A DNA stretch of 63,840 bases, filler included, from Pelomyxa schiedti (Eukaryota; Protista; Evosea): NCBI GenBank assembly GCA_020536535.1. It is 8 parts of 8 records of this genome, joined end to end, with 100 filler letters (N's around TTAATTAATTAA, not from the genome) between each part and the next. Parts side by side here need not be neighbours in the genome. Positions count along the whole stretch, not along the records: positions 41,442 to 52,277 come from JAHLWZ010000551.1; 7 more parts are not named here. One strand, 5' to 3'. A program made the position numbers and the translations under genes. Of this stretch, positions 5,430 through 52,277 are shown one piece after another. The notes below the pieces were generated by a model. That model searched no databases. It saw nothing but the letters and a program-made list of their open reading frames with translations, and had not been told where the DNA came from. Within the stretch, counting starts at the first letter, position 1. Each line of letters starts with the position of its first letter.

Positions 5430-6065
5430 TCCGCGAAAATCGTTAGTAGAAATGTGTGCACGCGAAGTCAGCCCTGGCACCCCATATTTCCTGAGGCATG
5501 TTCATCTTCACCCTTGGATTCGCTTTCTCCCCCAAAGCAGCAGCACCACCGGCAGCATCGTCTTGGATGCGGCAAATTGACACTTATTTCCCCCAAGCTC
5601 TGGGAGCGACGTATCCCTGCGTTGGAGACAGGATCTCTGCCTGTATCGGCGACACCTTCATCCCTCCAACACCGGCGCCCTCTTTCGCGAAGTCCACGAC
5701 CTGCAGGTGGTCCACGGCGCCGTTCTCGTTGTAGGGATCGAAGTGGTGCGTGAGGATGCTGTCGCAGCCCAGGTGGCAGATAAACGTGTGGTCGCTGGTC
5801 CACCACCCGCCGGCATCGTCGGCGCCGACGATCCCGAGCGTGTGGCTGACGGAAACGACGACGTGGTGTGGGGGATGCGATGCGCTCCAGACAATGAAAC
5901 GACGGACGGGAGAGAGCACCCAACGCTCGCCGATGGACCTCGTCACCAAGTCGTTTGTGAGGAGCGAGGCGTCTGCGACGGGATTGTGGGTGCTGGTGGT
6001 GTCGGGCACAGTGCGAGACACAACGCAATGAATTGCTCCTTGGTGTCGATCACACGTTCGATCAT
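5430..6065 (-). pseudogene. Disrupted family 1 paralog
   Basis: MIERVIDTKEQFIALCLALCPTPPAPT, then a frameshift near 5965 into LTNDLVTRSIGERWVLSPVRRFIV...PRAWGK, then TAA at 5584-5586. Homology resumes (VSICRIQD vs MSIYQIQG) and fades; left end approximate. Confidence 0.7.
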
Positions 6066-6107
6066 TGCTTTGGAAGTTTCGAGTTGCTCAGTGAAAACTT
6101 TGAAGGG

Positions 6108-7343
6108 CTAAAAGAAAACCACTTTGTGTGTGGCAGGCAGCAGGCACAGGGTAATGCCTGTCAGTTCGTCAATCACCTCCACTGGCGAATCTGAGGTTCC
6201 ATGTTGGTCTGAGTTGACATGTGCCAAGGGCTTGAGGAACAGACCACGATCCAGGAGTGTCTGGGGTAGGTCAGTTGGCACCTCGTTGCACAAATTGCCT
6301 GTGAAGACGTTGTAGAATCCAACACCAGCCCCGAGCAGAACCAGGTGCTCATTTGCCTTTTTGACCTGTGCACAGTTTTCACGCAGCTTGATCTGTTTGC
6401 CTGTTATGGGGCTCACTGCGACGGCAGTGGATAAGTACGGTATTTCCGTGGCATACTCCTCGTACACAACCCTTGCCTCACCACTTTCGTCGTCCATGAA
6501 CAGGGAGTGGCAATTGGCTCTAGGTGGAATTTCGCACCTGGGCCCTGCCTTCACCACCACCATTGACGATGTTGAGAAGCTCTTGGCCAGGTCAACAGTC
6601 AAGACCCCCCTGGCACGCGTGGCTAGTATCACCAGCACCGAGGCCTCGTCGCCAAAGCCAATGAGTCCAGGCTCATTGTGGGAGAACACAACATCAACAA
6701 CCTGGGCACCCATTTCATTTGGCACATTCACCCACGTGCCGGTGGATTTCGCTTTCGCTTTTGCTTTTGCTTTTGCTGTTGCCAACGATGCGGAAACACC
6801 CACCCCCTCCACCACAGCACTTCCTTGGATCTGGTAGATTGACATAATGCCTGATGCAGCGACCAAACTCACGGCCCACTTGTGGTTCCCCCAAGCCCGG
6901 GGCAGCAGGAGGCTCTGCAGTATGGTTGTCGCCTTGGTGCAAAGAAGACTGCGGGCACTAAATTCCACGAGCTCCACGTTGTAGTTCACGCGGTCGTGGG
7001 GGCCACGGTAGGTCGTGAGGATCCTGTCGCAGCCCAGCCAGCACGTGAACCTGTGCTTGTTGGTCCACACCAAGTCGGTCTCGTCGGCGCCGATGATGCC
7101 CAGCGTGTGTCCGATGGAGACGACGACCAGGGGAAGCGATTCTCTGGCAACAATGAAACGACGAGCGGGAGTGAGCACCCAGTTCTCACCGATGAGCCTT
7201 ACGACGTCGCTTGTGAGCCGAGGGGGCGCGCTGGAGGCGATTGTGGGTGAAGGTGTGGGTGGAGGGCACAGTGCGGTGCACATTGCCAGGAATTGCTCAC
7301 GGGCATCAAGCACCCGTTCTACTGTGACGTTCCCCTTCTGCAT
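6108..7343 (-). CDS. Family 1 hypothetical protein, intronless (~411 aa)
   Basis: Single ORF, first ATG at 7343 (MQKGNVTVERVLDAREQF). Family motifs DVVRLIGENWVL, AWGNHKWAV, TVDLAKSF, VIDELTG. Confidence 0.85.
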   Translation of the reverse strand: MQKGNVTVERVLDAREQFLAMCTALCPPPTPSPTIASSAPPRLTSDVVRLIGENWVLTPARRFIVARESLPLVVVSIGHTLGIIGADETDLVWTNKHRFTCWLGCDRILTTYRGPHDRVNYNVELVEFSARSLLCTKATTILQSLLLPRAWGNHKWAVSLVAASGIMSIYQIQGSAVVEGVGVSASLATAKAKAKAKAKSTGTWVNVPNEMGAQVVDVVFSHNEPGLIGFGDEASVLVILATRARGVLTVDLAKSFSTSSMVVVKAGPRCEIPPRANCHSLFMDDESGEARVVYEEYATEIPYLSTAVAVSPITGKQIKLRENCAQVKKANEHLVLLGAGVGFYNVFTGNLCNEVPTDLPQTLLDRGLFLKPLAHVNSDQHGTSDSPVEVIDELTGITLCLLPATHKVVFF

Positions 7344-7474
7344 GCTGATCTGTTTCACTCAAAGCAGATTTTTGATGTTCGAGAACACATCTCACGTCTC
7401 ACTGAATGCCCAGAAGTTGGCCGACACTGTGACTTTTTTCGGGCAGTCACCACCGCACACACAGAAAAAAAAAA

Positions 7475-8321
7475 ATGCAAGGCGGCCGCGCCACCATCCA
7501 ACGTTTGATTGATGCACGGGAGCAAATTTTTGTTGTGTGTCTCGCAGTGCACAACCCAACAAGCGCGTGCGCCATCCTGACAAACGACGTTGTTCGGCTC
7601 ATCGGTGAGCGTTGGGTCCTGACCCCCGTGAGGCGCTTCATCGTCGTCGTGCCCTCCACCAGCAGCTCCGGCGCCGGCCTGTTGCCTCCCACGTCCTTCG
7701 TTGTCTCGATCGGTCCCACAGCGGGAGTCGTCAGGGTCCACGAGACTGACGGTGGGGAAGGACCCTTCCACTACCTCTCGGTGATGTGCTGGCTTGGCTG
7801 CGGAAAGCTGATGCTCCTTAACCTCCGTGACCTGCAGCTCCAGGTTGCGGACGTGACGCAGGGCTGGCTCACACGAGTCCTGGAGCCCCCAGGGGGCGAA
7901 CTGTCTCTAGAAGCGTGGGGAAATCACAAGTGGGCAGTGGCCAGGTGCTCCAGAGGGTTGTACCTTCACTTGCACAACAAGGAGGAGGAAGCTCCTGAGC
8001 TCCGAGGTAATAATAATGACGATGTGAGGTCCTCTGGTTGCGATTCAATGGTGTCAGGAAGCGGCAGTGCAGCGTGGGTGTTGATTGATGCCTTCAAAAA
8101 TGTTAGACAAGCAGATGTTGTGTTCTCGCACACTGTGCCTCGTGATGTCATTGGGGATGGTGACGAGGCATCGGTGCTGGTGTGCATTGACAAAGCTTCG
8201 CTGAAGCTCTTGACTGTGGACCTAGCAAAGAGCTTCTCAAGGGGATCCTTGGTCACCGTGACGGAGGCTTCGCACTGTGGATACTGGCATCCCTTCCTGT
8301 TCATGGATGACCTGGGCCACA
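7475..8321 (+). CDS. Family 1 hypothetical protein, 3' end lost in gap
   Basis: MQGGRATIQRLIDAREQ...DVVRLIGERWVLTPVRRFIV...AWGNHKWAV...DEASVLV...TVDLAKSFSRG; divergent from 6108-7343. Confidence 0.85.
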
Positions 8322-8421
8322 NNNNNNNNNNNNNNNNNNNNNNNNNNNNNNNNNNNNNNNNNNNNTTAATTAATTAANNNNNNNNNNNNNNNNNNNNNNN
8401 NNNNNNNNNNNNNNNNNNNNN
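8322..8421. other. Assembly gap (100 nt, TTAATTAATTAA spacer). Other gaps: 26872-26971, 28212-28311, 41342-41441, 47546-47645, 52278-52377, 58145-58244, 59674-59773, 61317-61416
   Basis: Runs of N. The spacer places stop codons in all frames and is a scaffolding artefact; the gaps at 28212 and 47546 lack it. Confidence 0.95.
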
Positions 8422-8526
8422 TTGTATTACTGTATCTTCTTTATCATCCCAATCCGGCTCTGCAATGATGCCGCCCTTGGACAAAAGCCAAGAGAGTACT
8501 GCTTGCTCCATTTCAGGGACCCAAGC
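8422..8526 (-). repeat. Inverted copy of ~9114-9233 at a contig edge (probable amplification chimera)
   Basis: ttgtattactgtatcttctttatcatcccaatccggc...ggaccctttt is the reverse complement of aaaagggtccag...gatacagtaatacaa with 2 mismatches. Confidence 0.8.
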
Positions 8527-8637
8527 ACGAACTGGACCCTTTTTTTCCTTTTTCTTTGATGTTCAATTCCATTTAATTCCTTCAGAATTGTTGTTGCGGG
8601 AGGGATGCTATGAACTGAACTTATGTAGTAAACAGGG

Positions 8638-11350
8638 TATGGATAGAATGAGGGAGCGACTCCAAGAGATGGAATTGCATGCATCATTCATAACAGAACA
8701 TGTCAACCAACTGGAAACTGCTCTTCAACCTGACTTGGATTTCTCCCTTGCCGACGCAGAGGCTGAAGCTGAAGCCCAGTTTGAAGATGGAGAGGCAGTA
8801 GAGGGTGAAGGATATGACCCATACTATGAAGTTGCAAACCAAGAATTCGTGTTTGATGATGCAGAAGGATGGGCTCAAATGGGAGCAACAGACACCCCAG
8901 CCTTTGATGAAGAAAAAGAACAGAGACGATTGACAAAAAGGCAACAGAGGAAGAGTGCATGGCTCCGGAGGGAGTTTGAGGCCAGGTGGCTCGTGGAAAA
9001 AAGTGTGGAAGATTTTGCAGAGGAATTCATGGGAGACATATGTGGCCTCCCAACTCGTTCCCGAGCTCCAAGGCTGAGGGAGTGGTTATTTGAAGAAGGA
9101 ATGGGGGGAAGCAAAAAGGGTCCAGTTTGTGCTTGGGTCCCTGAAATTGAGCAAGCAGTACTCTCTTGGCTTTTGTCCAAGGGCGGCATCATTGCAGAGC
9201 CGGATTGGGATGATAAAGAAGATACAGTAATACAACAGCCATCACTTGGTATCTGGGCACCTGTTTGCCCTAAGGAACATGAAGTCCAGCACGTTGGGGA
9301 AGCTAAGCCAGAGAATAATGCCATGGCAGAAGCTCTACGTGACACAACTGCTACTCTCGTTCAGCGTAATAAGGAGATCCAGCAGCTTAATAAGGAGATT
9401 CAACAACTGCAAAGCCAACTATCTGTTGCTTTGTCCAGTGCCGTAGAGAAGCAACAGAGCACTGAGGATTCTCAAAAGGCGCAGCAAACATCCGTGACCT
9501 TACGTTCCATTGTGGCCAGCTGGACAGGAGGTGTGGATGAAGTGGCTGATGCTGTTATGAGTGAAATTGGAAACTCCTCCTTTCCACCTCGCAGCAGACA
9601 CGCTCGGTTCCGTAACTGGGTGCAAACAGGCTCCTGCTTTGGTTGGGAAGTTCAGATAGAGGATGCTGTAAAGCATTGGGCAGAGGGAGTTGGTATTGAC
9701 TTTGAAGAAATAACCTCTCAGCGTTGCTGTGCTGCAGCTGAGACACCACTACATACTATTGTATGTCTATTGGTGCAGGAGATAAAACTAAGAAAAAACC
9801 CACATAGATTTTCAAAAATCCACAGCAAGATTCCATTGCTGCCCTAGAAGCAGAAAATATTGCTCTGAAAAAAAGAATAGCTGAATTGGAGCTTGAGAGA
9901 ATTCATCCAATCGATAATGCCAAAAAGGTAGTACAGGAGGGCCAGTTGGAAGTAGGGAAGGCAATAGGCGTCCACGAAGTCAATGTAAGTCTCTTCCTAA
10001 TATGAACTCATTGCACATCCTGAAATGTAAAAGGAACTTACTGTGGAATCCCTTCTGGGTCAAGTGAAAGATCTACAGCAGCAGCTTTGCCAGAGTCAGG
10101 AAGAGAACAAAGAGTTGGCCAAACAATTAGAAGAGAGAAACAGTGTGGACGAAATAAAGGCTCAGAAAGAGCTGGAGCAAGCACATGATCTGCACTCTAC
10201 GGTTCTCAGAGAAATTGTGAACAACGAGTGGCTCACAAAGCACACATTGGAAGAATTTGTTGCGGAGCACATGTCTGGTGCTACGGGAATCCCCCAAAGG
10301 AGTAAAGTGGCTCGGTTCAGACAATGGATGCAAGGTGGGTGTTCTGGATGTGAAGAGGTGATAGAATTATGTGTGGAGCAGTGGCTTAAGAGCGAGGGAA
10401 TGGAAATCGAAGTTACTGGCCAAAATAAAGAAGTTACTGTCAATGTGGTGTGTATAACCGCTCCTATTTTTTTTTTCCCTTACTCAAGTAGGTTTGCGTA
10501 CCTGTTACACAAGGCAATGAAATTGTCAAGACACATCCAATTGTTCACGAGTCTCACAGTGCGCCTTCTGACGTGGTTCAGACACAGGAAATGGAAGAAA
10601 TACAAGAAGAGCTCTCGACCTTGCGTGGTATTATAGCCAAAAATGAAGACAAGAAGCAGAAAAGGCGAAAAGCAACTCACTCTGCTAAATTGCGTCAGCT
10701 GGTTCGAGATACTTGGCTCCCAAAATTCTCGCAAGAAGAATTCGCTGACGAAATTATGGTTTGTGTGCCAGCAATCCCCGAGAGGAGTCGCAGGGCGCGT
10801 CTTAGGTATCTCCAACCTTTCTCATTTGATTCCAACGAAATTCAAGGGAATGGCTGGAGGGTAAGCCCTCAATATGGGAAAATGAAATTGAAGCAACTGT
10901 GCAAACATTCCTCGAAGTTAAGGGATTGTACAATTCTGAAGAGGAGGTTCTTTCCTCCAATGACTTCTCTCATGCTTATCCCAACAATCGAACAAAAACA
11001 GGGTGAAACCGTCCCTCTACCACCAGTGCACCCGGTAATGACTTGCCAGCCAGTCAATAAATACGAGCAAGAAGACCTCAAGGAACAGTGTCAACTACTA
11101 TCCACTGCTAACAAGGAGCTGTCATCACACTTGTCTTACCTGGTGTGTAGTAAACTCTGTCCTATGATTTGCTTGACCTTACAACACTACAGGAAGGGGA
11201 CCAAAAATCCCTCCAGCAAGACCTTGAGGACATCAAATTCCGGTACTTCCAGTCCCTCGTTCTCTCCTTCAAGCTGCAAGGAATGTATGAACCTATTTAT
11301 TTAGCTCAACCACCCTTCTCAGCCCATCACACAATAACATACCACACCCA
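8638..11350 (+). CDS. Hypothetical coiled-coil protein with four copies of an unrecognised ~70-aa domain, multi-exon; end approximate
   Basis: Long ORFs 8465-9847, 10043-10636 and 10573-11304. Repeat W...EEF.EE.M...IP.RS..ARFR.W...IE..V..W...G alternates with heptad-rich segments. Confidence 0.7.
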
Positions 11351-41441: not shown

Positions 41442-43279
41442 AAGAGAGATCCAACTGCAAGTGAGCAGTAACCACAGCACCAGTGGGGACATAGAGGGCA
41501 CACACCGAGGCGTGGGTGCCACCAAGGTAGAACCCGACCCTGACGGCCCTGTCTGCTGTTGGACCATGCCCGGGTGTCTCAACATAGAGGTTTCCAAGCC
41601 TCCTGCAGCCTGGCTCTGTCACAAGCATGGGGACTGTGGCTGTGGGCCAGCTGTACACGTTGAGGTTGATGGACTGGGTCTCCTCATCCAGTGGGTACAG
41701 CGTGGTCTCACAGGGCACATTGTATGCTGTCCTGGTGTTTTTGGTGGTGATGGTGGTCCAGACATTGTCGATGTAGTCCCTGCCTCTTTGTGAGAACCTG
41801 TTGCAACCAACCTGGGTTGCATTGTGGACGGCTGGATTGAATGGAATTGCTGTGGCCAGTCCGTAGCTGCAAGGGGCCATGCGGTACTGAATGTAGTCCT
41901 CATTGAATGCGAACTGCAGAGCACCTTCCATGACAGCACAGTCAGGACTGGCCGGTCTGATCAGGTCCAGTGTCCCTGGTATTTCCAGCTGCTTCATCGC
42001 TTGGTAAAGTAGCTCAGACTTTGCAAATCCACCAACCAAGAAGATGTATCGCAGCCCTCTGACTTGGGCCATTGCGTTCCTCACATCGTTTACCACCGAG
42101 TTGATGACTGGTAAAACGCACTGCAACATAGAAGCAGGTGACATTTGGTGCAGTGCACTTCCTACCGGGAATGAGTAAGGCACGATCCTGCCTTGTGTGA
42201 AGATCTCCTTGTTTGCCTAATTTATGGTTATCTCAAAAAAAGAGCTCTTGTCCATAAATACCTCAATTGCGCGTGACAGTGCCAAGCACTCCACTGAGGT
42301 CTCGAGAGTGCCTGGCGAACTGCCGGTCTCAGCATAAAGCTGAGCGAGAATATTCTTGTCAATATTTGTGGAACCGTTCATGCTGCCGCAGGGAGCTGCA
42401 AGCTCCGATACACCAGAGGCCAACACTTCGTGTGAAGTGATGTCAATTGTGCCTCCCCCTGCATCAACAACAAGGTACCTTCAAAAAGTTAATAACTGGC
42501 AGATACGGCCATATCATAACCTGGTTCCCGGGTTCAACCCAAGGTATGCCATTTTTTTTTTGCAGTACAGGGAGGCTGCTTCCGGTTCTAGAGCGATTAT
42601 AACGTTGGAGTTGGAAGAGTTACTCAGCCCGGCTTCCCGTGCAGCATCGATCATTACCTGCAGAAACAGATTAATATTGGGTCAGAACTGCCTAGAGATA
42701 CCCGCTTTGCAGGTTCATCCCAAATCGCCGGAACAGTAATCACCCACAGAACGTCTTGTGCGGTGAGCACCCTTCCCTGCGATTTGAGCTCATCAAGGAA
42801 CCGCTTCTTGATGTGCCCCATTGTCATTTCCAGAATCTTTGTTATTGGGGCGGTAACGCTAGAGCCAGCAGCTTGACATGTGTTATTCCTGGGCCTTGTT
42901 GGATCCAATCCCAATTTGTATTTCTCAAACAGCAACCAATTATCTGGTTTCACTAGAAAACAATTAATTTCTGGTGGGGGAAACAAAATACACAAAAAGC
43001 AACAACACCACACATACTGTAATAAGCGTCAGTGGCAGTCTGTCCAAACTCCAAAGTCAGTGCCTCAGGAGTAGACGACGCCAGCACAGCCAAAGTGGTC
43101 TTTGTCTTTTGGCACTGTATGCAGCCCTCCCACGCCGCGTTGTATATCACCCTGTCGCGGTCGCCCGCGAAGCAGTAGCAGTACCCAGTGCACGACGTCC
43201 CGATGTCGAGCGCACACGCCGCGCCAAAGACTTGGCCAGAAGTGGGCGAGGGCGACGCAGCAGCCGTAGATGCGGACAT
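41442..43279 (-). CDS. HSPA12-like atypical Hsp70 (stop possibly in gap)
   Basis: ALDIGTSCTGY, WVITVPAIWDEPAK, IIALEPEAAS, LVVDAGGGTIDIT, FLVGGFAKSELL, DCAVMEGA. Confidence 0.85.
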
Positions 43280-43419
43280 TGAGCTGTAATGTGTTGTTGA
43301 TTGGCTACTTGTTGTTGAGTTGGTCCCGGGCACCCGGAAAAAATATTTTTTGGTTTTTGTTGTAGTTTCTTCCCAGCACCAACAAGCTGGTTGGTTGTTT
43401 TCGTTGATTTCCAAAACTA

Positions 43420-44977
43420 GCTTGGCACATTAACACTTCATGGCGTCGATGGGTGGCAATGGCAAGGGAACGGCGGGATAGAACTCTTGCCCTGTGTCAC
43501 GTTCAACAACTGCTGGGAGTCTTGGATGGCCTGTTGCTAACACCTAGAAAGAAGTTGTAAAATTGTGGGTGGTTGTGGTGCACAAACGGTGGCCCAGTCA
43601 TATGTAAGTGGTGGATAACGTAACACCATATACTTGCTCTCATTGTAAATCTGGCAGCAAAAAAGCTCAATCTCTGGAGTAAATTTCCCCTGAAAGGAGT
43701 TAATAACTTAAAGGGTATGAACTTTTAATACCGTGCACCGGACTTGACATATAATTTGGTTGCCCATAGCCTCGGAAAACAGGGAAGCATTATGCTTTTG
43801 ACACCATACTCGTAAGTCAGAGCGTGCAGATTCAGAAAGTTGTGTCTCTAAAGTCCCAAAGTAGCGGTGAAGTACTGCTGAGACTTGTGTAAAAATATAA
43901 TTTACACATTCCAGCACAAACTCAACTTGGCCAGTTTCTTTCAGAGTTCCCTGTAACGCAAGCAAGTCCTTCAATGCCAAGGTGTTAGTACAAGCATAAT
44001 ACTATTGCCCTTACCGAGTTCCGGTACGCTTTCATCTTAGCGACAATGTCCCCATCCCTGGGGAACTCGTCAGGCGGAGCGACCCTCCCTACTCCACCGA
44101 AACATGATCCAATCTGCTGTGTATGTGGCTGTATTGGAGTTTGTGTTTGTGTTGGTGTCTGTGTCTGTGCCTGTGGTTGCGATTGTGGCTGCTGGTTTTG
44201 CTTCCGAGCGAGTTCGGCCGAATCAAGAGCGTCAAGAGCAGAATTGGCAGTGGCCTGCAATTTCTCGATATACGATGTCAAATGAGCAGTGTATTGCCTC
44301 CTGACTTTGCACGACGCGCAGCCTGCCGCCGGCGAGGAGCACGGCCCCTGCTGCTGCTGCGCAGACGCGCCCAGGACCATATCCACCGTCTTGTGGAGCT
44401 CCGCCCCCTCCCCCTGCAGGAAGATGGCGTAGTCTCGCCACGAGGCGTACGAGGGAGGAAGCTGCAGCGGGGGGTCGCCTCCCTCCATTCGCCCACTGCT
44501 GCCTGTGCTTGGGCTTGTGTTTGTACTTGTACTTGTATTTGTACCTGTAGTTGTAGTTGGCGTCGGAGCTGCTGTTGGATTTGGTGGCGTTGGAGTTGGA
44601 GTTGGTGTTGGAGTTGGAGTTTGTGTTGGAGTTGCCGATGGCGGTGTCGCCGCCGGCGCGCCTTGTTTTGTCTTGCTTTTCTTTTTTGGTTTGTTGCTTT
44701 CTGGGTCTTCCTGCGCTTTCACTGGTGGTGCCACTGCGGCTGTTTGCGTGGGAGCTGTCTGTGACGGCGGTTGCTGCTGCGTCGTCTGGTGTTGTTGTTG
44801 ATGTTGAAGCGGTGGCGGGGCCACCGAGGTGGGGGCCAGGGAAACCCCGAAAACAGAACCCGTGGGGGGGACGAAGTTGAACCCAACAGCGGGAGCAGGC
44901 GACCACGGAAGTGAAAGCGGCTGGGGGGCGGATGCGACGGTGGTGGCGGCACCTGGCTGCAGTGAGGTTGGATGCAT
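43420..44977 (-). CDS. Hypothetical protein, Pro/Thr/Gln-rich N-terminus plus helical C-terminal region; end approximate
   Basis: 330-aa ORF 43985-44977 followed by spliced helical exons at 43708-43980. Confidence 0.55.
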
Positions 44978-45180
44978 GCCGCCCTGTTGGTTTTTTCTTC
45001 AAATAGAAACTGCAACCAACTGGGTACAAGAAGTGCCTCAGACCGGTGTCGTGGGCGATTGTTATTTTCGAAAATGACAGCGTTCTGGCAGATTTGTTCT
45101 TCAGACAACACTCTGGGAGGCTTGGTGGAATTCGATCGTCTTTCAGCGAATCTGACAGGCACCCCTTTCATCAAAAAAAA

Positions 45181-48100
45181 ATGACGCAGAACAACGCATT
45201 GACGACACTGTCTAACTTCGCGTCGTCGTTGCTGGGTGACGTTAAATTTGATCTTGCTGGCTTGTGTGTTTACTTTTTCCCTCGCCCAACTTTGAGTAAC
45301 TGTATTGACAGGCAATTGAACGTCACACTGGCAATGAATAGGATACAAGTGCGAAGACAAAAGAACGTGGAGTCAATCAAAAAAAGCAAAAAGGAGGTGG
45401 CTGAGCTATTGGTGGAAGGCAAAGACGAAAAGGCCAGGATCAAGGTAGGATTATTATACTTCACTGTTTTGAAAATACTATTTGAGTCTTGGCCTTACTC
45501 TCGTTCTGCAATAAGACTGGAGCAATCGTTGTGGAAGAATATATGACGGATGTGCTGAACGTAGTAACGCTATCATGCCAGCAATTGCTTGGGAGGATGG
45601 ACCTCATTGGAACAAAGTTTTAGTCTTCCTTTGTTGTAACCATTATTGTTTAAGTGACAAACAGAGGAAAGTGCGCAGCTGATCTCAGAGAACCGTGTTG
45701 CACAATAGTCTATGCAGCCCCGTATCTTGATGATCAACCTGAATTGATGAAAGTAAGCCCGTTTCTCATGTATTTTTTTCCCTCGAAACAATCTCTGGTG
45801 ATATACACTTCCAGGTTCGTGCTATGCTTCTTGCCAGGTTTGGAAGCAAGTTCCCCAATGAATGCGTTGAAGATACCGCAATAAGTCCGAAGGCGCCCAA
45901 TACCGATAAGAGATAGTCCTCTTATTGTAACAATAATACAGGTAGTCACTCGGCTTAAACGAGAGCCACCAGACACATCTCTTGTGAACTGCTACATTAG
46001 TGCGATTGCAAAAGAAAATAATATACCTGGTTATGACACCTCCGTACGACGAATCAGCTTTTCTGTGGTTTTAACAGTAGTAAAGAGTTTGATACCGGAT
46101 GATTTATTTCCAGATTTGCTTCCACCTCAACAACCGCCACAACTTCCTGAACTTGGGCCCCCGCCATCCTTTGATAATACATTTTCTGCGGTATGTCACG
46201 CTTCTCTGGTTTGATGTATCAACAGCATGTCCCTAGACAGATCCCTCAAAATGCTCTGCTCGAGGTCCAGGTCTTGTTGATGGAGTGGCAGGCTCAACTT
46301 GTCAGTTCTTAATAGAAGCCCGTAACCCACTGGGGCAACCACAGATACATGGAGGTGATAAATTCGCCGTTTACGTCAGTGGACCGGAAAACACAAGGAT
46401 TTATGGCCAGGTTGTTGATAACAACAATGGGACCTATTCTGTGTCATATCAACCCCCTCTCAGGTTGTTTTCATTTTGTGCATTAGTTTTTTACACATTT
46501 CAGTGGTGGGTATGCCATTGCCGTTCACTTGGGTCAAACTCCTATTGGGGATGGAAGTCCCTACACTCTATTTATCCGGAATAATGAAGTTTGAGACACT
46601 ATATTACCTTCTTTTTTTATCTAACAATGAAAAAGCCCACAACAGACCCCCGTAATTGCACAGCTTCAGGGGACGGCTTGGGCTCCCCTTTCACCAATCA
46701 GCTTACATCTTTCACTATTACTGCAAAGGATACCTCCAATACTCCAAGAACAAAAGGAGGGGATACCTTCAAAGTATACATAGCCGGTCCTGCGGGAATC
46801 AAGATGCTTGGCACAGTTGTTGATGACAACAATGGAACCTATACTGTTCAATATACCCCGCCAAAGCCGTCAGTTCTTCTTTTCACGAAAAACCAAATCT
46901 AATATGAAAACTAGTGGTGGATATGCCATTGCAATTCACTTGGGAAATGTACCAATAGGAAATGGAGCACCCTTTGAAGTATTTGTGAAAGATCCTCCAG
47001 TGACAGTTAAAGATGTGCCACCAAAAGAAGGTAAACTTTTTGGTTCACGAACAGAACGCTTATTCTGCAGATCCCTTGCGGGCAAGGTTGAATTCCATCA
47101 AGGGTACTACAGTGCAAGCAAGGCCACAACCCGCTCCCCCCGCTCCGAAGCCAGCACCTCCTCCAGTTGTTGTGCTTCCCAAGGTAGTTCTCTTTATGTT
47201 AATTATTTCTTACTTGTGCAGCACGGCAAAATTATTCCCAGTAAAGTTGGCCCAGGTGTTATTTTTGACAACGGAACTGGGTATATGAAAGCCGGAATGG
47301 CTGGAGAGGCTGGACCACGTTGTTGCTTTCCTACTGTAATAGGAAGGCCAATGTACCGACAAAATATGCCAATGCTTTCAGAGCATTTGTATACTTCCTC
47401 ACTCCGCAATGTAATGGTTGTCTGAAGTTTCATTTAGGTATGTTGGAGAGGAAGCCAAAGCAAAGAAGGGAATTCTTGCTCTTAGATTCCCCATCAATCA
47501 TGGCATTATAACGAACTGGGAGGATATGGAAGCTGTCTGGCACCANNNNNNNNNNNNNNNNNNNNNNNNNNNNNNNNNNNNNNNNNNNNNNNNNNNNNNN
47601 NNNNNNNNNNNNNNNNNNNNNNNNNNNNNNNNNNNNNNNNNNNNNAGAGGAAGCCAAAGCAAAGAAGGGAATTCTTGCTCTTAGATTCCCCATCAATCAT
47701 GGCATTATAACGAACTGGGAGGATATGGAAGCTGTCTGGCACCACACTTTTTTGGTAGGCACTTGTTAATTTACATTTTATGTTAACCTTCCAAGAATGA
47801 AATTCGAGTTGACCCAACACAGCACCCTGTCTTCATCACAGAGCCAGCCTTGAATCCACGGGTGATCTTTCCTTCTTTTTTGTATTTTACGTATCGACCC
47901 TAATGCAGGACAGCAGGCACAAACTAGCTGAGGTAATGTTTGAGAAATTTGGTGTCCCGGGCCTCTATGTCTGCCCGCAAGCAATTCCTTCTCTTTTTTC
48001 TGGTGGTCGAACAACAGGAGTTGTTCTTGACGCTGGCGATGGGGTATGAAATTCCTTTCACCACATTTAATTAATTCTTCAAAGGTTTGCCATACTGTTC

Positions 48101-49031
48101 CGATTGTAAACGGCATTCCCGTGAAACGTGCAATACAAAGACTAGAAATAGGAGGTCGTGACATAACAAGCTATTTAGTTACATTACTTACCGAAGATCA
48201 CGTTTGTCTTCCTGCGTTATGTGCATCTCTAATCATCCAACAACAGATTCTCCTTGGCTCTACAAGTGCGGAACGTGACATTGCTCGTGATATTAAGGAA
48301 ACTACTTGTTATATTCCTCTCAACTACCAGTTGGAACTTAAAAAACCGCTGGACAGACTTGTAACAGCCTACAGGATGCCTGATGCAGAGGTCAGAGCGA
48401 ATTATCTTTCCATAACAGGGAAAATTAACATAAACCAGGTTGTTCATGTAACAAAATCCCGTTTCATGTGCGCAGAGCCGTTATTCAATCCAACATTGCT
48501 TGGGAAAGACACCTTGGGACTCCCTGTATATAATTACATTCGCACCCATTATCTTGCTTATATTTAACAGCAAATGATACTTGAGAGCATTAACGGCGTT
48601 GATTCAAAGGACAGACAATCAATGCTACCTAACATTGTTCTTGCCGGAGGCACTTCCCTGTTTACCGGTATTCCATTCCATTCCCAACAAGCAAACCGCC
48701 AACCATTCCCCCAAAAAAGGATTCAAAGAAAGAATCGAGCAGGACCTAAAGCAGATGATGACTCCGCAAGACCGCACCCTAATGAAACTATTTGCGCCGG
48801 AAAACCGCAAGTTTTCCGTGTGGCTAGGTGCTGCCCAAATGGCTGCCAACCACGAGACCTTCTGCAACCTCTGTGTATCCAAAGAAGAATTCGCCGAGAA
48901 AGTATGTCCCATAGAAACAACAACCAACAAAGTAAAACGCGCAGACCAAACACAGCACTGTCTCAACAACACAATAACTAACAACAACAAACCAGGGTGT
49001 AGAGTTATGCATGTCCCAGTTCGACTTTTGA
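45181..49031 (+). CDS. fia: IST1 domain + 2 filamin (Ig) repeats + Pro-rich linker + actin domain (filactin-like), multi-exon, spans a spurious gap
   Basis: IST1: [13 protein letters not shown]...[18 protein letters not shown]. Filamin: [33 protein letters not shown]. Actin: [44 protein letters not shown]. Phase-compatible splices join all parts. Confidence 0.88.
47646..47744 (+). repeat. Duplicated contig overlap across the 47546-47645 gap (assembly artefact)
   Basis: agaggaagccaaagc...gtctggcacca occurs immediately before and after the gap. Confidence 0.9.
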
Positions 49032-49099
49032 TTGCACAGAACCGCGGAGAGGTGGTTTTCGAGGAAGCCATCAATACAACTTCAATAAAAATAAAAGGA

Positions 49100-50150
49100 A
49101 TGCCAAGACGATACACAGTACCGTTTCACTTTTTATTGTTGAGTCTTGAATCTGAGTAACGGGAACCAAGGGATGTGGAACCCTGTGTGGAATATCGACT
49201 GTTGTTGCATTTTTCGGAATGGTGATGCTGGGGCTTGGAATTGCCCTCACTCTGTACAACGCCATATCATTTATAGGTTACGTTTCCTGCCACTTACTCT
49301 CAGAACAGCGGCTTGCCTCTTCACCAATTTATTATAAAAGCGGAAACAATGATGAATTATTATCTTTCCTTTTCTAACTTTGAGATAGGATTCAGTGGAG
49401 AATATAGCGGGAAGTTATCCCCAACTGGAGCATACTGGATGCTTATTATCGGTATTTGGGGACCGGAGGTTTTTCGTTTGTTTGGATTGATTGTGTGGAA
49501 GCGGAGCATGTTTTTTGTGGCATTCACAGAGGACCATACTTGTCAAGTAACAGCTTTTCCCTCATTTCACTTCTAAGTCCAATGAACCATCTAAGCCTTG
49601 CAGTTATGTTGTGCCTCCAAAGCTCCCACAGACTCGACTAAGAAGTGGGTGCCAATCGTTGCCAGTTTTATCATTATAATATACCCTTGGATTTTGCTTG
49701 GTGTTGCAGCCATTAACTTACTTATCATGCCGAAAGTAGGTGAAGAAAGTTCTTTTACTAATTTTGGTGCACTTATCGCCATACAATCAGGCTGCTGATG
49801 TTAGAGTGCCAGTTGGACCACAGGTCGTAGCAACTATCTACCCTGCTTTTTGTTTTTCTTGTACTTTTGCCTCAATGCATTATTGTGAGCCCCTTTGCTA
49901 TTATTATGATCTTGCGAATATGTTAACTCTCCAAAGCATCTATTGCCGAACTTGGCGGATGCAGTCGCTCCTGCCGAGTATGGAGGGGCAGAATACTTGC
50001 ATGGGCAACATACACAATGACAAAGTTCTTCTACCACCACACATGTGACTTCTTCCCAGATACTGGGTCGGCTGTGGACTTCACCACAGCCAGTGCCTAT
50101 TCCTCACTATAAAAATGAACACTTTCACTTGTCCTTTACATCATTGATGC
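49100..50150 (+). CDS. Hypothetical multi-pass membrane protein; exon structure and end uncertain
   Basis: Spliced hydrophobic segments GISTVVAFFGMVMLGLGIALTLYNAISFI, AYWMLII and VPIVASFIIIIYPWILLGVAAINLLIM. Confidence 0.45.
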
Positions 50151-50159
50151 TTATAAGCA

Positions 50160-51250
50160 TCAAAGAGAAATTACTTCTGATCCCTGGTCACTGTTGTCCC
50201 TCAATGTTTGGTGGAAATTGACCAAACAAATCTTGATGTGCCTGGACAGTTCTGGAATGCCAATCCCACTTTTGGTGTTCACAATGCTTACAGTGTAAGA
50301 AAAGAAGGGAAAACTACAACATACAAATTTTTGTAGTCTCTTGTTTTTGTCAGATCCTGATCATTAATCATGTTAGTAATGCTACTGCAAAGTTTGTGGA
50401 AATAACCTTAATGATAGTCTTTATGTGAGGGTCTGTCCATTCATCTCCTATTTTTGTGTTTCCGACCAAGATGAGTTCACAGGTAGACGGACAAAATCTT
50501 TGTCTTTCTTGGTATTTTGTGATGAGCCAGTGGTTTGAAACCTCAACACATCTGTGATCCATTCCAATAGAGCCTCAGCAGAAGACAAGGTATGGTCATA
50601 AACAAGCAGACATACGGCACTATTGCGGAAATGAACACCTATACAACCCATGGTTACAGAAGGCCAGAGGAAACACTAGATGACGCACTGGGTACAGATT
50701 CAACACAACCGTGAGGTGGCAGATCCCACTGAGATGTCAGTAGAAAAGAAGAGAAATGTTGTGGAAAAATACTAGATCAGCGGTACAATTAATGTCCTCA
50801 AGGGTCAATTGCCTCTGTGTTTCATACTAAATTATTAGTTTAGAAGTAAGTGTAAAAAGTTATCAGAACATGTCGAGGAGAATCAACAAATTCTCCTTCC
50901 TGGGTACATCATCAGTGGGAACCAAAGAAACAACACATTTTCTCACCAGCAACTGGTGAAAGAGCGATGTTTTCCCAACTTGCGGGTCTACAAAAAATGG
51001 TGGGCACACAACTGAGGAAAAAAAACAACCCACCACCAGCAATGCAAATCTTTGCCTCGATGGGTTCTGTAGGCCTCGGCAAGACTAGGTCCTCACCAGG
51101 GACCAGCCGTGGGGACATCAGCGACTCGCCGGCCCCCCACCGGTTCCACTGGGTTATCAGTGGTGAAGTGCACCGTGGCGAGGAGCTTGGTGATGGGGGC
51201 AGCTTCTTCCTGCACCCGGAAAAGCATGATGTCGGGCAACTCTGGCCCAT
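50160..51250 (-). CDS. Divergent Rab/Ras-like GTPase with an N-terminal MG..C extension and no C-terminal cysteines
   Basis: KICIAGDPQVGKTSLF (after splicing), WDLPPHG, HFRNSAVCLLVYD, LILVGNTKIGD, VNTKSG; ends ...GSEVISL*. Confidence 0.7.
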
Positions 51251-51496
51251 TATTATTTTGGCAATGCGGGCTGTTTGATTAACAAGGCTGGGTTTTCTCG
51301 CGTGTTTAACTTGGTTTTTCCCTACAATTGCTGTGGATTGTGGTTGTACCCCTGGTCAGGGTTCTTATGGTTGTTTTCCTTGTTTCCGTTTTGCCCGCTT
51401 TTTATTTGTATTCTGTGGTGGTTAGACTGGAGTGTTAGGGTAGAAAAGGGTACCGGGTTTGTTTTTGTTGCTCCTAGTGGCGAGGAGGATACTACT

Positions 51497-52277
51497 TTAG
51501 GTTTCTTTGGGTTCGTTGGTTGTACTATTTGCTTTGTGTTCTGTATTGGGTGAGAAGAACGATAATCTCAGGCAAGCCACAATTACCGTTGGTGTGCTGG
51601 CCAGGGGCAACCTAATATATGTCAGACCGGTATTCTGAAATGGGGTTTGTGCAAACCGTTTCGGCTTTCCGGTTTCCGGCGTTTTACTGAGTGTTGGAGT
51701 GTCAGAGGCGCCTGGGCCGAGTTTTCTTTTTTGTGGGCAATTCTTATGCGGTGTTTCATTGCTTGTGTCCCGTTTCTTCTTGGTCGGGATGCTTAGTATA
51801 GTTGTAGTACTTGTCAATGCCGGTACTGACGGCGTTTCACTGGGCTCGGCTTGTTTAACTGATTCAGGAATTTGGGTGGCCTGTGTTCAAAAGTGTTAAT
51901 GAAAGTTGGAGATGAAGGATGCGGTGCCTTTTCTTCCACAATTTGTTGTACAACAGGTTTTTGATCGGCTTGTGTTGTAGGGATTGCTTCTTTAATGGAT
52001 GTTGGTTCTTGTTGCACCACCGGTGCAGTTACTACTGGAGAGGTCCGAGGTAAATGAATTGCAAGAGCGGAGCTTTCTTCCGGAACCAAGTTTCCAAGGA
52101 GAATCTCTTCTATTCTGGTTGCGGCACTCTCTCTGCCTGTGTGCCACCCGATCTTAGCTTTTGCTTTTTCAAGAAGTTCTGTGGCGGACTTATCTGAGTC
52201 GATGGAACCCACTTCAGGCAGTGGCGGTGGCTCATACACCCTTATATGAAGGAGAAGTTCGGCAATCTGTTCACCAC
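51497..52277 (-). CDS. Hypothetical low-complexity basic protein, partial (5' in gap, 3' end uncertain)
   Basis: ORFs 51814-52239 and 51497-51817 are joined in frame by a 47-nt GC-AG intron; KKKR and KRK clusters. Confidence 0.5.

What the first reader, a model, noticed from the sequence alone, without database searches (positions are those of the whole stretch)
45181..49031. One gene fuses an ESCRT-III IST1 domain, two filamin repeats and an actin domain
Splices are phase-compatible throughout: ...DNTFSA|[12 protein letters not shown] (IST1 region to filamin, intron ~46191-46236), ...PPKE|DPLRAR and ...VVLPK|[20 protein letters not shown] (to actin). No stop or new start intervenes. Established: Dictyostelium filactin combines filamin repeats with a C-terminal actin domain; I cannot confirm from memory whether its IST1 domain has been functionally characterised. 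Inference: a protein coupling ESCRT-III membrane scission to the actin cytoskeleton. The actin part keeps DNGTG and NIVLAGGT but diverges elsewhere (WLGAAQMA for WIGGSILA), so polymerisation is uncertain.
Basis: partly seen in the sequence, partly recalled or inferred. Interest (0 to 1): 0.7.

Follow-up and report, generated by a model that had tools for sequence, protein, structure and literature searches.

The report
Filactin gene of the amoeba Pelomyxa
This is a real single gene that joins an IST1 (ESCRT-III) domain, two filamin repeats and an actin domain, but it is the Pelomyxa schiedti copy of filactin, a protein family already known from other amoebae, so the finding is correct but not new.

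Summary
Window 45181-49031 (+) holds one 22-exon gene whose 870-residue product reads Ist1 core, two filamin repeats, proline-rich linker, actin domain. Spliced contigs cross 18 of the 21 introns, including IST1-to-filamin and filamin-to-actin. The N-gap (47546-47645) hides nothing: it lies between two exact copies of the same 99 bases, and a mismatch-free RNA contig, the sister locus and homologues all show a single copy.

The piece is a contig of the published Pelomyxa schiedti assembly. The gene is already deposited as KAH3761220.1, wrongly named "P-type ATPase", with a spurious 22-residue repeat at the gap.

The architecture is that of filactin, described in Dictyostelium and listed for Entamoeba and Physarum. 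I found it also in Mastigella and in metagenomes, once as a single uninterrupted ORF.

New here:
- a corrected gene model;
- a second syntenic copy (98% protein identity, dN/dS 0.04);
- an actin domain only 42% identical to actin, with an intact nucleotide pocket but diverged filament contacts;
- an IST1-type MIM1-like motif between filamin repeat 2 and the actin domain.

The ESCRT-to-actin coupling remains an inference. Verdict: new member of a known kind, low interest.

The parts
45181..49031 (+). Whole filactin gene: 22 exons, 21 introns (38-94 nt; 20 GT..AG, 1 GC..AG). CDS is 2613 nt = 870 aa plus stop once the gap artefact is collapsed.
   Evidence: Phase arithmetic. The exon set equals the deposited model P0298/KAH3761220.1 except at the gap. 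Spliced contigs.
45181..45263 (+). Exon 1: start codon and a 22-residue N-terminal extension, then the start of IST1 helix 1
   Evidence: First ATG of the ORF. The intron 45264-45311 that follows (48 nt, GT..AG, in frame) rests on the deposited models P0298 and P0154 and on the IST1 register. No RNA junction was shown for it.
45312..45444 (+). Exon 2: IST1 helix alpha-1
   Evidence: Pfam Ist1 profile 3-44, 28.8 bits. Human IST1 6tza residues 12-55.
45516..45616 (+). Exon 3: IST1 helix alpha-2 (TLSC where IST1 has ELYC)
   Evidence: Pfam Ist1 profile 47-75. Found in P0298. No RNA junction shown for its two flanking introns.
45665..45752 (+). Exon 4: IST1 core
   Evidence: Pfam Ist1 profile 80-106. 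The 3' junction 45752|45815 is seen in X4 loose ends (table 7).
45815..45892 (+). Exon 5: IST1 core, followed by the GC..AG intron 45893-45941
   Evidence: X4 joint 45890>45940, skips 49, both=3. Only the GC..AG placement keeps the frame and matches P0298. GC-AG introns make up 1.59% in this genome (PMC8887013).
45942..46043 (+). Exon 6: end of the IST1 core (Pfam Ist1 ends at about 46028)
   Evidence: Pfam Ist1 profile 139-164. X4 joint 46043>46086, GT..AG, 42 nt.
46086..46190 (+). Exon 7: proline-rich linker 1, with the LPELGPPP element at 46143-46166 (MIM2-like, hypothesis only)
   Evidence: resembles vertebrate IST1 LPELPSVP; Physarum has KLPSVPTFPTFPSVP. Disordered in the AF2 model.
46237..46463 (+). 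Exon 8: filamin repeat 1, main part
   Evidence: Pfam Filamin 58.9 bits. Dictyostelium gelation factor 1wlh, 101 bits. The IST1-to-filamin splice 46190|46237 is seen in X4.
46504..46588 (+). Exon 9: filamin repeat 1, last strands
   Evidence: X4 loose ends join 46463|46504. Beta strands in the AF2 model.
46636..46868 (+). Exon 10: filamin repeat 2, main part
   Evidence: Pfam Filamin 54.8 bits. X4 joints 46588>46636 and 46868>46915.
46915..47030 (+). Exon 11: end of filamin repeat 2 and the first residue of the MIM1-like motif
   Evidence: X1 record 1 and an X4 loose end join 47030|47071.
47027..47102 (+). MIM1-like motif [12 protein letters not shown] (aa 450-461), split by intron 47031-47070
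   Evidence: Fits (D/E)xxLxxRLxxL(K/R). 1 of 2000 shuffles gives a match. Same position in Mastigella (VDDLASRLQRLK) and meta156 (DDELRRRLNAL). Vertebrate IST1 ends in FDDLSRRFEELK. It is the only helix (453-460) in the disordered linker, at low pLDDT.
47071..47183 (+). Exon 12: MIM1-like motif plus proline-rich linker 2
   Evidence: X1 record 1 piece 47069-47181.
47222..47388 (+). Exon 13: start of the actin domain (P1 loop [10 protein letters not shown], diverged D-loop)
   Evidence: Pfam Actin profile 7-43. X1 record 1 carries the window's alleles here.
47438..47754 (+). Exon 14 (true length 118 nt): actin subdomain 2 and the H73 sensor. As assembled it contains the gap artefact.
   Evidence: X1/X4 joint 47392>47646 with GTTGG between equals splice 47388|47438 plus a single 99-nt copy.
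47546..47744 (.). Assembly artefact: 100 N plus a second copy of the 99 nt at 47447-47545. To be collapsed; no sequence is missing.
   Evidence: It causes the 22-residue repeat [22 protein letters not shown] in deposited P0298.
47796..47861 (+). Exon 15: actin
   Evidence: Pfam Actin profile 87-107. Joints 47753>47795 (X1, X4) and 47860>47908 (X4).
47909..48043 (+). Exon 16: actin (Q137; P2 loop DAGDG)
   Evidence: Pfam Actin profile 109-151, 41.6 bits. Motifs.
48085..48201 (+). Exon 17: actin (H161; diverged W-loop VNGIPVK)
   Evidence: X4 joint 48042>48085, with the sister-copy SNP at 48043..
48247..48390 (+). Exon 18: actin (DIKET, K213/E214)
   Evidence: X4 joint 48201>48247. The intron shows as a gap against solved actins.
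48439..48525 (+). Exon 19: actin (hydrophobic-plug region [12 protein letters not shown])
   Evidence: Joints 48388>48437 and 48525>48571 in X1 and X4.
48571..48667 (+). Exon 20: actin (adenine pocket [10 protein letters not shown])
   Evidence: Pfam Actin profile 308-338. Joint 48666>48719 in X1 and X4.
48720..48901 (+). Exon 21: actin (RK336; [10 protein letters not shown])
   Evidence: Pfam Actin profile 341-400, 39.8 bits. X4 joint 48901>48996.
48996..49031 (+). Exon 22: diverged C-terminus [11 protein letters not shown] and the stop codon
   Evidence: Found in P0298 at residues 882-892. X1 record 2 has loose letters after 49031, so the transcript runs on into the 3' UTR (table 7).

Best explanation
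The locus is one of two Pelomyxa schiedti (Archamoebae, Amoebozoa) copies of filactin. It is a single 22-exon gene for an 870-residue protein.

Domain order:
- a 22-residue N-terminal extension;
- an IST1-type ESCRT-III core (about aa 23-195);
- a proline-rich linker;
- two filamin Ig repeats (231-440);
- a MIM1-like helix (450-461);
- a second proline-rich linker;
- a complete but diverged actin domain (about 500-870).

Shown here: gene structure, transcription as one spliced mRNA, domain identities, resolution of the gap, orthology to the Ist1-filamin-filamin-actin proteins of other Amoebozoa, and strong purifying selection.

Inferred mechanism:
- The N-terminal half is a whole IST1. Its core co-assembles with CHMP1/Did2-type ESCRT-III subunits.
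- Its MIM-like elements recruit MIT-domain ATPases (VPS4, spastin).
- The filamin pair sits in what is the flexible linker of ordinary IST1 and acts as a spacer or dimerising rod.
- The C-terminal actin fold still binds and probably hydrolyses ATP. It docks the ESCRT module onto actin filaments or actin-binding partners.
- In this lineage its changed D-loop, W-loop and C-terminus make ordinary co-polymerisation doubtful.

I put about 0.95 on the identity and gene structure, and about 0.35-0.4 on the mechanism as worded.
For: Gene model:
- Phases close exactly, and 21 introns have canonical ends.
- 18 of 21 junctions are seen in spliced contigs.
- The exon set is identical to deposited P0298 apart from the gap artefact.
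- It aligns to the sister locus with no exonic gaps.

Gap.

Domains:
- Pfam per exon and full length.
- The IST1 core is 31% identical to fish IST1 over 189 aa, E 8e-29.
- The filamin repeats are closest to Dictyostelium gelation factor.
- For the actin domain, the best 60 PDB matches are all true actins, E about 1e-109.
- The AF2 model shows an ESCRT-III helical hairpin, two Ig sandwiches and an actin fold.

Family:
- Same architecture in Physarum P0251, Mastigella P0155/P0299, P. schiedti P0154 and metagenomic P0003/P0152/P0153/P0007.
- One uninterrupted ORF in L002.
- All 15 Ist1-actin proteins lie on one side of a 97/82 branch in the actin-domain tree.
- Literature: PMC5859476 lists Ist1-filamin-filamin-actin in Entamoeba and Dictyostelia; PMC2441452, PMC4758236, PMC8932920 and PMC5225641 describe filactin.

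Selection: dN/dS 0.041 between the two copies.

Mechanism:
- The nucleotide-pocket residues are all conserved.
- The MIM1-like motif is conserved in position within Archamoebae and matches the IST1 C-terminus.
- Actin-less Ist1 + 4-filamin proteins end in five tandem MIM1-like repeats.
Against: - No binding or polymerisation was tested.
- The MIM1-like motif is absent or degenerate in Physarum and in the P0003 clade. Its helix has pLDDT below 50, and a PDB sequence search with the linker found nothing.
- The LPEL element lies in low-complexity sequence.
- The D. discoideum filactin sequence itself was never retrieved, so orthology to the named founder rests on architecture, the literature and the Physarum intermediate.
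- The actin domain is only 42% identical to actin, whereas Dictyostelium filactin is described as 'extremely homologous' to actin (PMC2441452). Properties may therefore not transfer.
- Three 5' junctions (introns 1-3) were not shown in RNA contigs.
- No single contig spans the whole mRNA.
- X4, which carries most junctions, has no library kind on record.
Confidence: 0.9

Rival explanations
1. Annotation or assembly chimera: an IST1 gene and a separate filamin-actin gene lie next to each other and only appear fused because short introns can be drawn in frame.
For: The contig comes from a single-cell amplified assembly with scaffold errors. The gap here is one. A chimeric 464-aa 'Ist1' gene model also sits at a scaffold join on the sister contig. 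No single RNA contig covers the whole gene.
Against: A spliced contig crosses the IST1-to-filamin intron, and one RNA contig covers filamin, linker and actin. The same three-part protein occurs as complete Trinity ORFs in Mastigella and Physarum. It occurs as one uninterrupted 2433-nt ORF in L002. Both P. schiedti copies keep the frame through all exons, with dN/dS 0.04.
Confidence: 0.02
2. The actin domain is no longer an actin in function. It is an Arp-like, non-polymerising ATP switch that regulates the IST1 module or caps and binds filaments, rather than entering filaments as a subunit.
For: Identity to actin is 42%. The D-loop, the W-loop (YEGYALP to VNGIPVK), residues 286-289, WIGGSILASL and the C-terminus have all changed, while every nucleotide-contact residue is kept. 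The whole Archamoebae clade shares these changes. The D-loop region has low confidence in the model.
Against: The best PDB matches are true actins, not Arps, and align end to end without large insertions. Dictyostelium filactin is incorporated into nuclear actin rods (PMC5225641). The hydrophobic-plug region is partly kept.
Confidence: 0.4
3. The window copy and the L001 copy are two strongly diverged haplotypes of one locus (from one multinucleate cell or from the seven pooled cells), not two paralogous genes.
For: Gene order is the same on both contigs: HSP70-like gene, unknown gene, filactin, and downstream genes. Both versions occur in one sample. The assembly pooled seven cells (PMC8887013). 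A third partial copy sits at L001:1-644.
Against: dS of 0.21, intron identity of 85% and flank identity of 70-81% are very high for alleles. Only 8.6% of BUSCOs are duplicated in the assembly.
Confidence: 0.45

Closest known systems
Filactin (Fia) of Dictyostelium discoideum, and the 'Ist1-filamin-filamin-actin' proteins of Dictyostelia, Entamoeba and Physarum
   Same: Same domain order and number: Ist1, two filamin repeats, C-terminal actin. Similar size (870 aa here; 763 aa in Entamoeba per PMC5859476; 856 aa for Physarum P0251). Amoebozoan host. The actin domains fall on one side of a supported branch.
   Different: The actin domain is far more diverged here: 42% identity to actin, against 65% in Physarum, and 'extremely homologous' in Dictyostelium per PMC2441452. 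There is a clear MIM1-like motif after filamin 2, which is degenerate in Physarum. Two copies are present. The Dictyostelium sequence itself was not compared.
IST1 (ESCRT-III-like regulator of VPS4; human IST1, yeast Ist1)
   Same: The full ESCRT-III-like core aligns to IST1 residues 10-197 at 31% identity, and the full Pfam profile is covered. A motif matching the IST1 C-terminal MIM1 is present, and there may be a proline-rich MIM2-like element.
   Different: Two Ig repeats sit between the core and the MIM1-like motif. An entire actin follows the motif, so the motif is internal rather than C-terminal. ELYC is TLSC.
Conventional actin
   Same: Complete actin fold with no large insertions. Conserved: P1 and P2 phosphate loops, H73, Q137, H161, K213/E214, G301-T303 and K336. 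Best PDB hits are actins at E about 1e-109.
   Different: 42% identity. The D-loop, W-loop, 286-289, 340-349 and C-terminus have changed. It carries a 500-residue N-terminal extension.
Dictyostelium gelation factor (ABP-120) rod repeats / filamin Ig repeats
   Same: Both repeats match PF00630 and are closest to gelation-factor rod domains (1wlh, 101 bits).
   Different: Only two repeats, and no calponin-homology actin-binding domain.

Membership tests
Filactin (Ist1-filamin-filamin-actin) | N-terminal Ist1 domain (PF03398) | tested here: met
   136.2 bits against a cut-off of 33.6, profile 3-164. Exon hits run in order. 31% identity to fish IST1.
Filactin (Ist1-filamin-filamin-actin) | Two filamin/ABP280 repeats between the Ist1 and actin domains | tested here: met
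   135.3 bits in 2 stretches. Exons 8 and 10 give 58.9 and 54.8 bits. Two Ig sandwiches in the model.
Filactin (Ist1-filamin-filamin-actin) | Complete C-terminal actin domain | tested here: met
   332 bits. PDB actins at E about 1e-109 over residues 7-369.
Filactin (Ist1-filamin-filamin-actin) | All domains on one transcript and one polypeptide | tested here: met
   Spliced contigs cross both domain boundaries and the frame closes. Orthologous complete transcripts exist, as does an intron-free ORF. No single full-length RNA contig was seen.
Filactin (Ist1-filamin-filamin-actin) | Sequence orthology to D. discoideum Fia | tested here: inconclusive
   The Dictyostelium sequence was not reached by the searches. 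Homology to Physarum P0251 is shown, and Ist1-actin proteins group together in the tree. PMC4758236 reports a filactin in Physarum.
Filactin (Ist1-filamin-filamin-actin) | Actin domain 'extremely homologous to conventional actin' (PMC2441452) | tested here: not met
   42% identity, against 65% for Physarum. This describes the Dictyostelium protein rather than being a strict criterion.
Filactin (Ist1-filamin-filamin-actin) | Association with actin rods and with spindle / nuclear-envelope abscission sites | not testable with these tools
   Known only from Dictyostelium microscopy (PMC5225641, PMC8932920).
IST1 | ESCRT-III-like helical core | tested here: met
   The model has the long hairpin H25-62/H66-98 plus four further helices.
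IST1 | MIM1 motif (D/E)xxLxxRLxxL(K/R) for MIT-domain binding | tested here: inconclusive
   [12 protein letters not shown] fits, and it is conserved in position in Mastigella and meta156. But it is internal, it is absent or degenerate in other clades, its helix has low pLDDT, and there was no PDB hit.
IST1 | Binding to CHMP1/Did2 and VPS4 | not testable with these tools
Conventional actin | Nucleotide-binding residues | tested here: met
   D11, G13, G15, K18, H73, Q137, D154, G156, D157, G158, H161, K213, E214, G301, G302, T303 and K336 are all present.
Conventional actin | Conserved filament-contact elements and more than about 80% identity | tested here: not met
   The D-loop, W-loop, 286-289, 340-349 and C-terminus have diverged; identity is 42%.
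P-type ATPase (the deposited GenBank name) | P-type ATPase domains | tested here: not met
   Pfam finds only Actin, Ist1, Filamin and a weak Invasin_D3 in P0298 and P0154. The name is an annotation error.

The most novel reading that the evidence does not exclude
Filactin is not 'an actin with an odd extension'. It is the amoebozoan IST1 itself: a complete IST1 (core, MIM2-like and MIM1-like elements) into whose flexible linker a filamin pair was inserted, and onto whose C-terminus an actin was fused once, early in Amoebozoa. VPS4/spastin-dependent ESCRT-III remodelling in these amoebae would then be physically wired to an actin-fold module. The same 'Ist1 - variable middle - actin' scheme exists with other middle modules (cold-shock/OB domains, or none), and an actin-less 'Ist1 - 4 filamin - 5x MIM1' form exists in uncultured eukaryotes. 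In Archamoebae the actin part has since drifted into an Arp-like, non-polymerising ATP switch.
Probability: 0.25. Interest if true: 0.5.

Novelty: new member of a known kind. Interest (0 to 1): 0.2.

Why it matters
For the scan, this is a correct reading of raw sequence that lands on a known family, so it should rank low.

For curators:
- two GenBank proteins of Pelomyxa schiedti (KAH3761220.1 and KAH3763526.1) are misnamed 'P-type ATPase';
- one of them carries a 22-residue artefact caused by an unmerged contig overlap.

For cell biologists, filactin remains the only known protein that joins an ESCRT-III family member covalently to actin, and its function is still poorly understood. Three observations give concrete, testable handles on how the two halves cooperate:
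- an IST1-type MIM1-like motif survives between the filamin pair and the actin domain in Archamoebae;
- actin-less relatives carry arrays of the same motif;
- the actin domain keeps its ATP pocket while losing filament contacts.

They also bear on whether filactin is the working IST1 of these amoebae.

Tried and rejected
- Extra intron in exon 1 ending at 'gacag' with a donor at GGT/GAC: no frame-preserving combination by hand. The real 48-nt intron (45264-45311) came only from the deposited models.
- My first placement of intron 5 (45885-45945) and an unsplit exon 5 were wrong. The RNA contigs corrected them.
- Pfam on ten neighbouring ORFs: no hits. The neighbours were identified only through the sister contig's gene calls.
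- Word search with the actin part of P0003 was mostly flooded by tandem-actin gene models. It still yielded Physarum P0251 and the Ist1-OB-actin variants.
- Word search with the IST1 part alone returned only vertebrate IST1. This says nothing about whether a stand-alone IST1 exists in P. schiedti.
- The 'upstream Ist1 gene' on the sister contig turned out to be a chimera across a scaffold join, not a stand-alone IST1.
- PDB sequence search with the MIM1-like linker: no hit.
- Paper searches for IST1 in Entamoeba or Amoebozoa gave nothing on stand-alone IST1.
- I first took the unspliced X2/X3 contigs as direct proof for the window's copy at the gap. One search showed they are sister-copy contigs. 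For the window's own copy the proof is the mismatch-free RNA contig X1 record 1.
- D. discoideum filactin was never retrieved.
Searches used single exons by reference or the deposited proteins. The only joined computation was a local codon count against the sister locus.


Full report
**1. What is in the sequence**

The piece (41442-52277) has about 45% G+C and many very short introns. On the + strand from 45181 to 49031, exons can be chained so that the frame closes exactly on the stop at 49029-49031.

The bases left of the N-run (47447-47545) and right of it (47646-47744) are the same 99 nt, base for base. Ninety-nine is 33 codons, and the duplicate lies inside one actin exon.

**2. Domain content, exon by exon**

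- Pfam places exons 2, 3, 4 and 6 in order on the Ist1 profile (3-44, 47-75, 80-106, 139-164).
- Exons 8 and 10 match Filamin (58.9 and 54.8 bits).
- Exons 13-21 run in order along Actin, from profile position 7 to 400.
- No profile positions are lost at the gap: 47-81 on the left copy, 52-84 on the right copy, then 87.
- Against solved structures, exon 2 matches helix alpha-1 of human IST1. Exon 8 matches the rod repeats of Dictyostelium gelation factor (101 bits). The actin exons match actins, with the two in-frame introns appearing as gaps.

**3. RNA and DNA evidence**

One study holds this sequence: one run on record as single-cell RNA-seq (X1) and three runs from one sample with no library kind on record (X2-X4). 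All are available only as contigs.

Laid on 45100-49100, X4 and X1 carry spliced forms across 18 of the 21 introns. These include the IST1-to-filamin intron 46191-46236. One 500-nt contig from X1 covers filamin 2, linker, actin exon 13 and actin exon 14.

The contigs corrected my model twice. The intron after ...TAISPK is 45893-45941 with GC..AG ends, and exon 5 of my first model contains a further 42-nt intron (46044-46085). GC-AG introns are 1.59% of introns in this genome (PMC8887013). Introns 1-3 were not among the junctions shown.

**4. The gap**

- Unspliced contigs in X2 and X3 join 47446 to 47646 ('skips 199', with 99 bases fitting either side). That is a single copy of the 99 nt.
- All 40 variant bases in those contigs equal the base of a sister locus. 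They therefore belong to the sister copy, not to the window's copy.
- The window's own copy is covered by X1 record 1. It has no mismatch, carries the window's alleles at 47251, 47320 and 47383, and also passes through with one copy.
- The sister contig L001 has no gap there, and both window copies map to L001:8313-8411.
- Both copies map to the same residues of homologue P0003, whose next residue continues in exon 15.
- Conclusion: the 100 N plus one 99-nt copy are an unmerged contig overlap. Nothing is missing and the frame is continuous.

**5. Whose gene it is**

- The exhaustive search with the longest stop-free actin stretch returned a Pelomyxa sp. transcript fragment (68% identity). It also returned long proteins that Pfam shows to be Ist1 + 2 Filamin + Actin.
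- A word search seeded with one of them found KAH3763526.1 of Pelomyxa schiedti (P0154, 870 aa). Its cluster holds KAH3761220.1 (P0298, 892 aa), on a contig of 10,836 nt, which is exactly the length of this piece.
- Every exon of my corrected model is found verbatim in P0298, which also supplies the 48-nt in-frame intron 45264-45311.
- The only difference is a 22-residue internal repeat ([22 protein letters not shown] twice) where the annotator spliced across the gap. The true product is 870 aa.
- Both proteins are named 'P-type ATPase' in GenBank, but Pfam finds only Ist1, Filamin and Actin in them.
- The genome is the single-cell assembly of Záhonová et al. (PMC8887013): seven cells, 7.43 introns per gene.

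**6. Two copies**

L001 (JAHLWZ010000375.1) carries the same gene order but is only 70-89% identical in DNA.
- Exons are 95.1% identical. Introns are 84.8% identical, with many indels.
- There are 107 synonymous against 17 non-synonymous codon differences: dN 0.0086, dS 0.21, dN/dS 0.041 (a local codon count, not a search).
- The proteins are 98.0% identical.
- Both versions occur in one sample, and both appear in spliced contigs.
- Whether they are paralogues or very divergent haplotypes is open.

**7. Comparison with what is known**

- Later papers call it the IST1-like protein. They place it in stress-induced nuclear actin rods (PMC5225641) and with spastin at spindle / nuclear-envelope abscission sites (PMC8932920, PMC11816917).
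- The Physarum genome paper reports a filactin there (PMC4758236).
One of these is a single uninterrupted 2433-nt ORF (L002).
- In a tree of 43 actin domains, all 15 Ist1-actin proteins lie on one side of a branch with 97/82 support. This is compatible with one origin of the fusion. P. schiedti groups with Pelomyxa sp. and Mastigella.
- The kind is therefore known. The gene is an unrecognised, misnamed member of it.

**8. How it probably works**

Shown:
- The IST1 core is complete: 31% identity to fish IST1 over 189 residues, E 8e-29.
- The AF2 model has the long ESCRT-III hairpin, two Ig sandwiches and a confident actin fold (mean pLDDT 76.6; actin part 80-94).
- The actin domain keeps every residue that contacts the nucleotide: DNGTG...K18, H73, Q137, DAGDGVCH, K213/E214, GGT and K336.
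- It is only 42% identical to actin, against 65% for Physarum filactin. Its D-loop, W-loop (YEGYALP to VNGIPVK), residues 286-289, WIGGSILASL (here [10 protein letters not shown]) and C-terminus are changed.
- Its best PDB matches are nevertheless true actins, not Arps.

New observation:
- Directly after filamin repeat 2 lies [12 protein letters not shown]. This fits the MIM1 consensus (D/E)xxLxxRLxxL(K/R), a consensus I take from established knowledge of ESCRT-III/MIT interactions.
- Only 1 of 2000 shuffles of the protein gives such a match.
- Mastigella has VDDLASRLQRLK and a metagenomic relative DDELRRRLNAL at the same place. Vertebrate IST1 ends in FDDLSRRFEELK.
- In the model, the only secondary structure in the disordered linker 441-489 is a helix at 453-460, although at low confidence.
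- Metagenomic proteins with Ist1 + four filamin repeats and no actin end in five tandem EDDLMAKFNALK motifs.
- Linker 1 contains LPELGPPP, reminiscent of the LPELPSVP element of vertebrate IST1. That region is low-complexity, so I treat this as a hint only.

Inference:
- The N-terminal half is a whole IST1 whose linker has taken up a filamin pair.
- It should co-assemble with CHMP1-type subunits and recruit VPS4 or spastin through the MIM-like elements.
- The appended actin fold ties this module to actin filaments or actin-binding proteins.
- In Archamoebae the actin part may act as an Arp-like ATP switch rather than as a filament subunit.
- None of these interactions was tested.

**9. What remains open**

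- Introns 1-3 lack a displayed RNA junction.
- No full-length RNA molecule was seen.
- The library kind of X2-X4 is not on record.
- The Dictyostelium protein itself was not compared.
- Whether P. schiedti has a separate ordinary IST1 could not be tested. The word search with the IST1 part returned only vertebrate IST1. The 'Ist1' gene called upstream on the sister contig is a chimera over a scaffold join that contains a third, partial filactin copy.

**10. Verdict**

The structural interpretation is right, the function is plausible but unproven, and the novelty is low.

Noticed in passing
window 47546-47744; GenBank KAH3761220.1 (P0298): The deposited protein for this contig is named 'P-type ATPase' although it has only Ist1, Filamin and Actin domains. 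It also carries a 22-residue internal repeat created by splicing across the unmerged 99-nt overlap. The sister protein KAH3763526.1 has the same wrong name.
   Followed up: yes
L001 (JAHLWZ010000375.1) 6001-9701 versus window 45181-49031: There is a second, syntenic filactin copy: 98% protein identity, exons 95% and introns 85% identical, flanks 70-81%, dN/dS 0.04. Both copies occur in one sample and both are spliced. Whether they are paralogues or very divergent haplotypes is undecided.
   Followed up: partly
L001:1-2283: A 464-aa 'Ist1' gene is called here. It starts with a third, partial filactin copy (L001:1-644, 97% identical to the L001 gene), runs into 100 N, and continues in unrelated GC-rich sequence. 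It is a chimera over a scaffold join, not a stand-alone IST1.
   Followed up: yes
P0157, P0158 (ENA metagenome proteins, 827-931 aa): Relatives with an Ist1 core and four filamin repeats, but no actin. They end in five tandem MIM1-like motifs (EDDLMAKFNALK).
   Followed up: partly
P0252, P0255, P0308 (JGI/Logan, 945-1070 aa): Ist1 and actin domains separated by cold-shock/OB domains of the RNase II/R type (CSD2, OB_RNB) instead of filamin repeats. They sit on contigs barely longer than the ORF, and their actin domains are about 61% identical to actin.
   Followed up: partly
P0072 = MDP2437515.1, labelled 'MAG: hypothetical protein [archaeon]'; P0151: An Ist1 + actin protein without filamin repeats is filed under an archaeal metagenome-assembled genome. 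In the actin tree it sits with the eukaryotic Ist1-actin group. It is most likely a eukaryotic contig binned into an archaeal MAG, but this was not checked.
   Followed up: no
window 48273-48902 (run X1, record 2): This RNA contig carries the window's alleles at 48339 and 48453 but the sister copy's alleles at 48606-48826. It is either an assembly mosaic of the two transcripts or a recombinant haplotype.
   Followed up: partly
window 43985-44977 (-) and 44100-44800: The upstream neighbour is a long ORF rich in Pro/Thr/Gln repeats (TPTPTP, QPQ runs) with no Pfam match. It corresponds to the 449-aa gene of unknown family on the sister contig. The region has 56-59% G+C and strong strand skew.
   Followed up: no
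window 41442-43228 (-): This is the 3' part of an HSP70-like gene (weak Pfam HSP70 on the sister contig's 541-aa product), cut by the end of the contig. My Pfam scan of its largest exon found nothing.
   Followed up: partly
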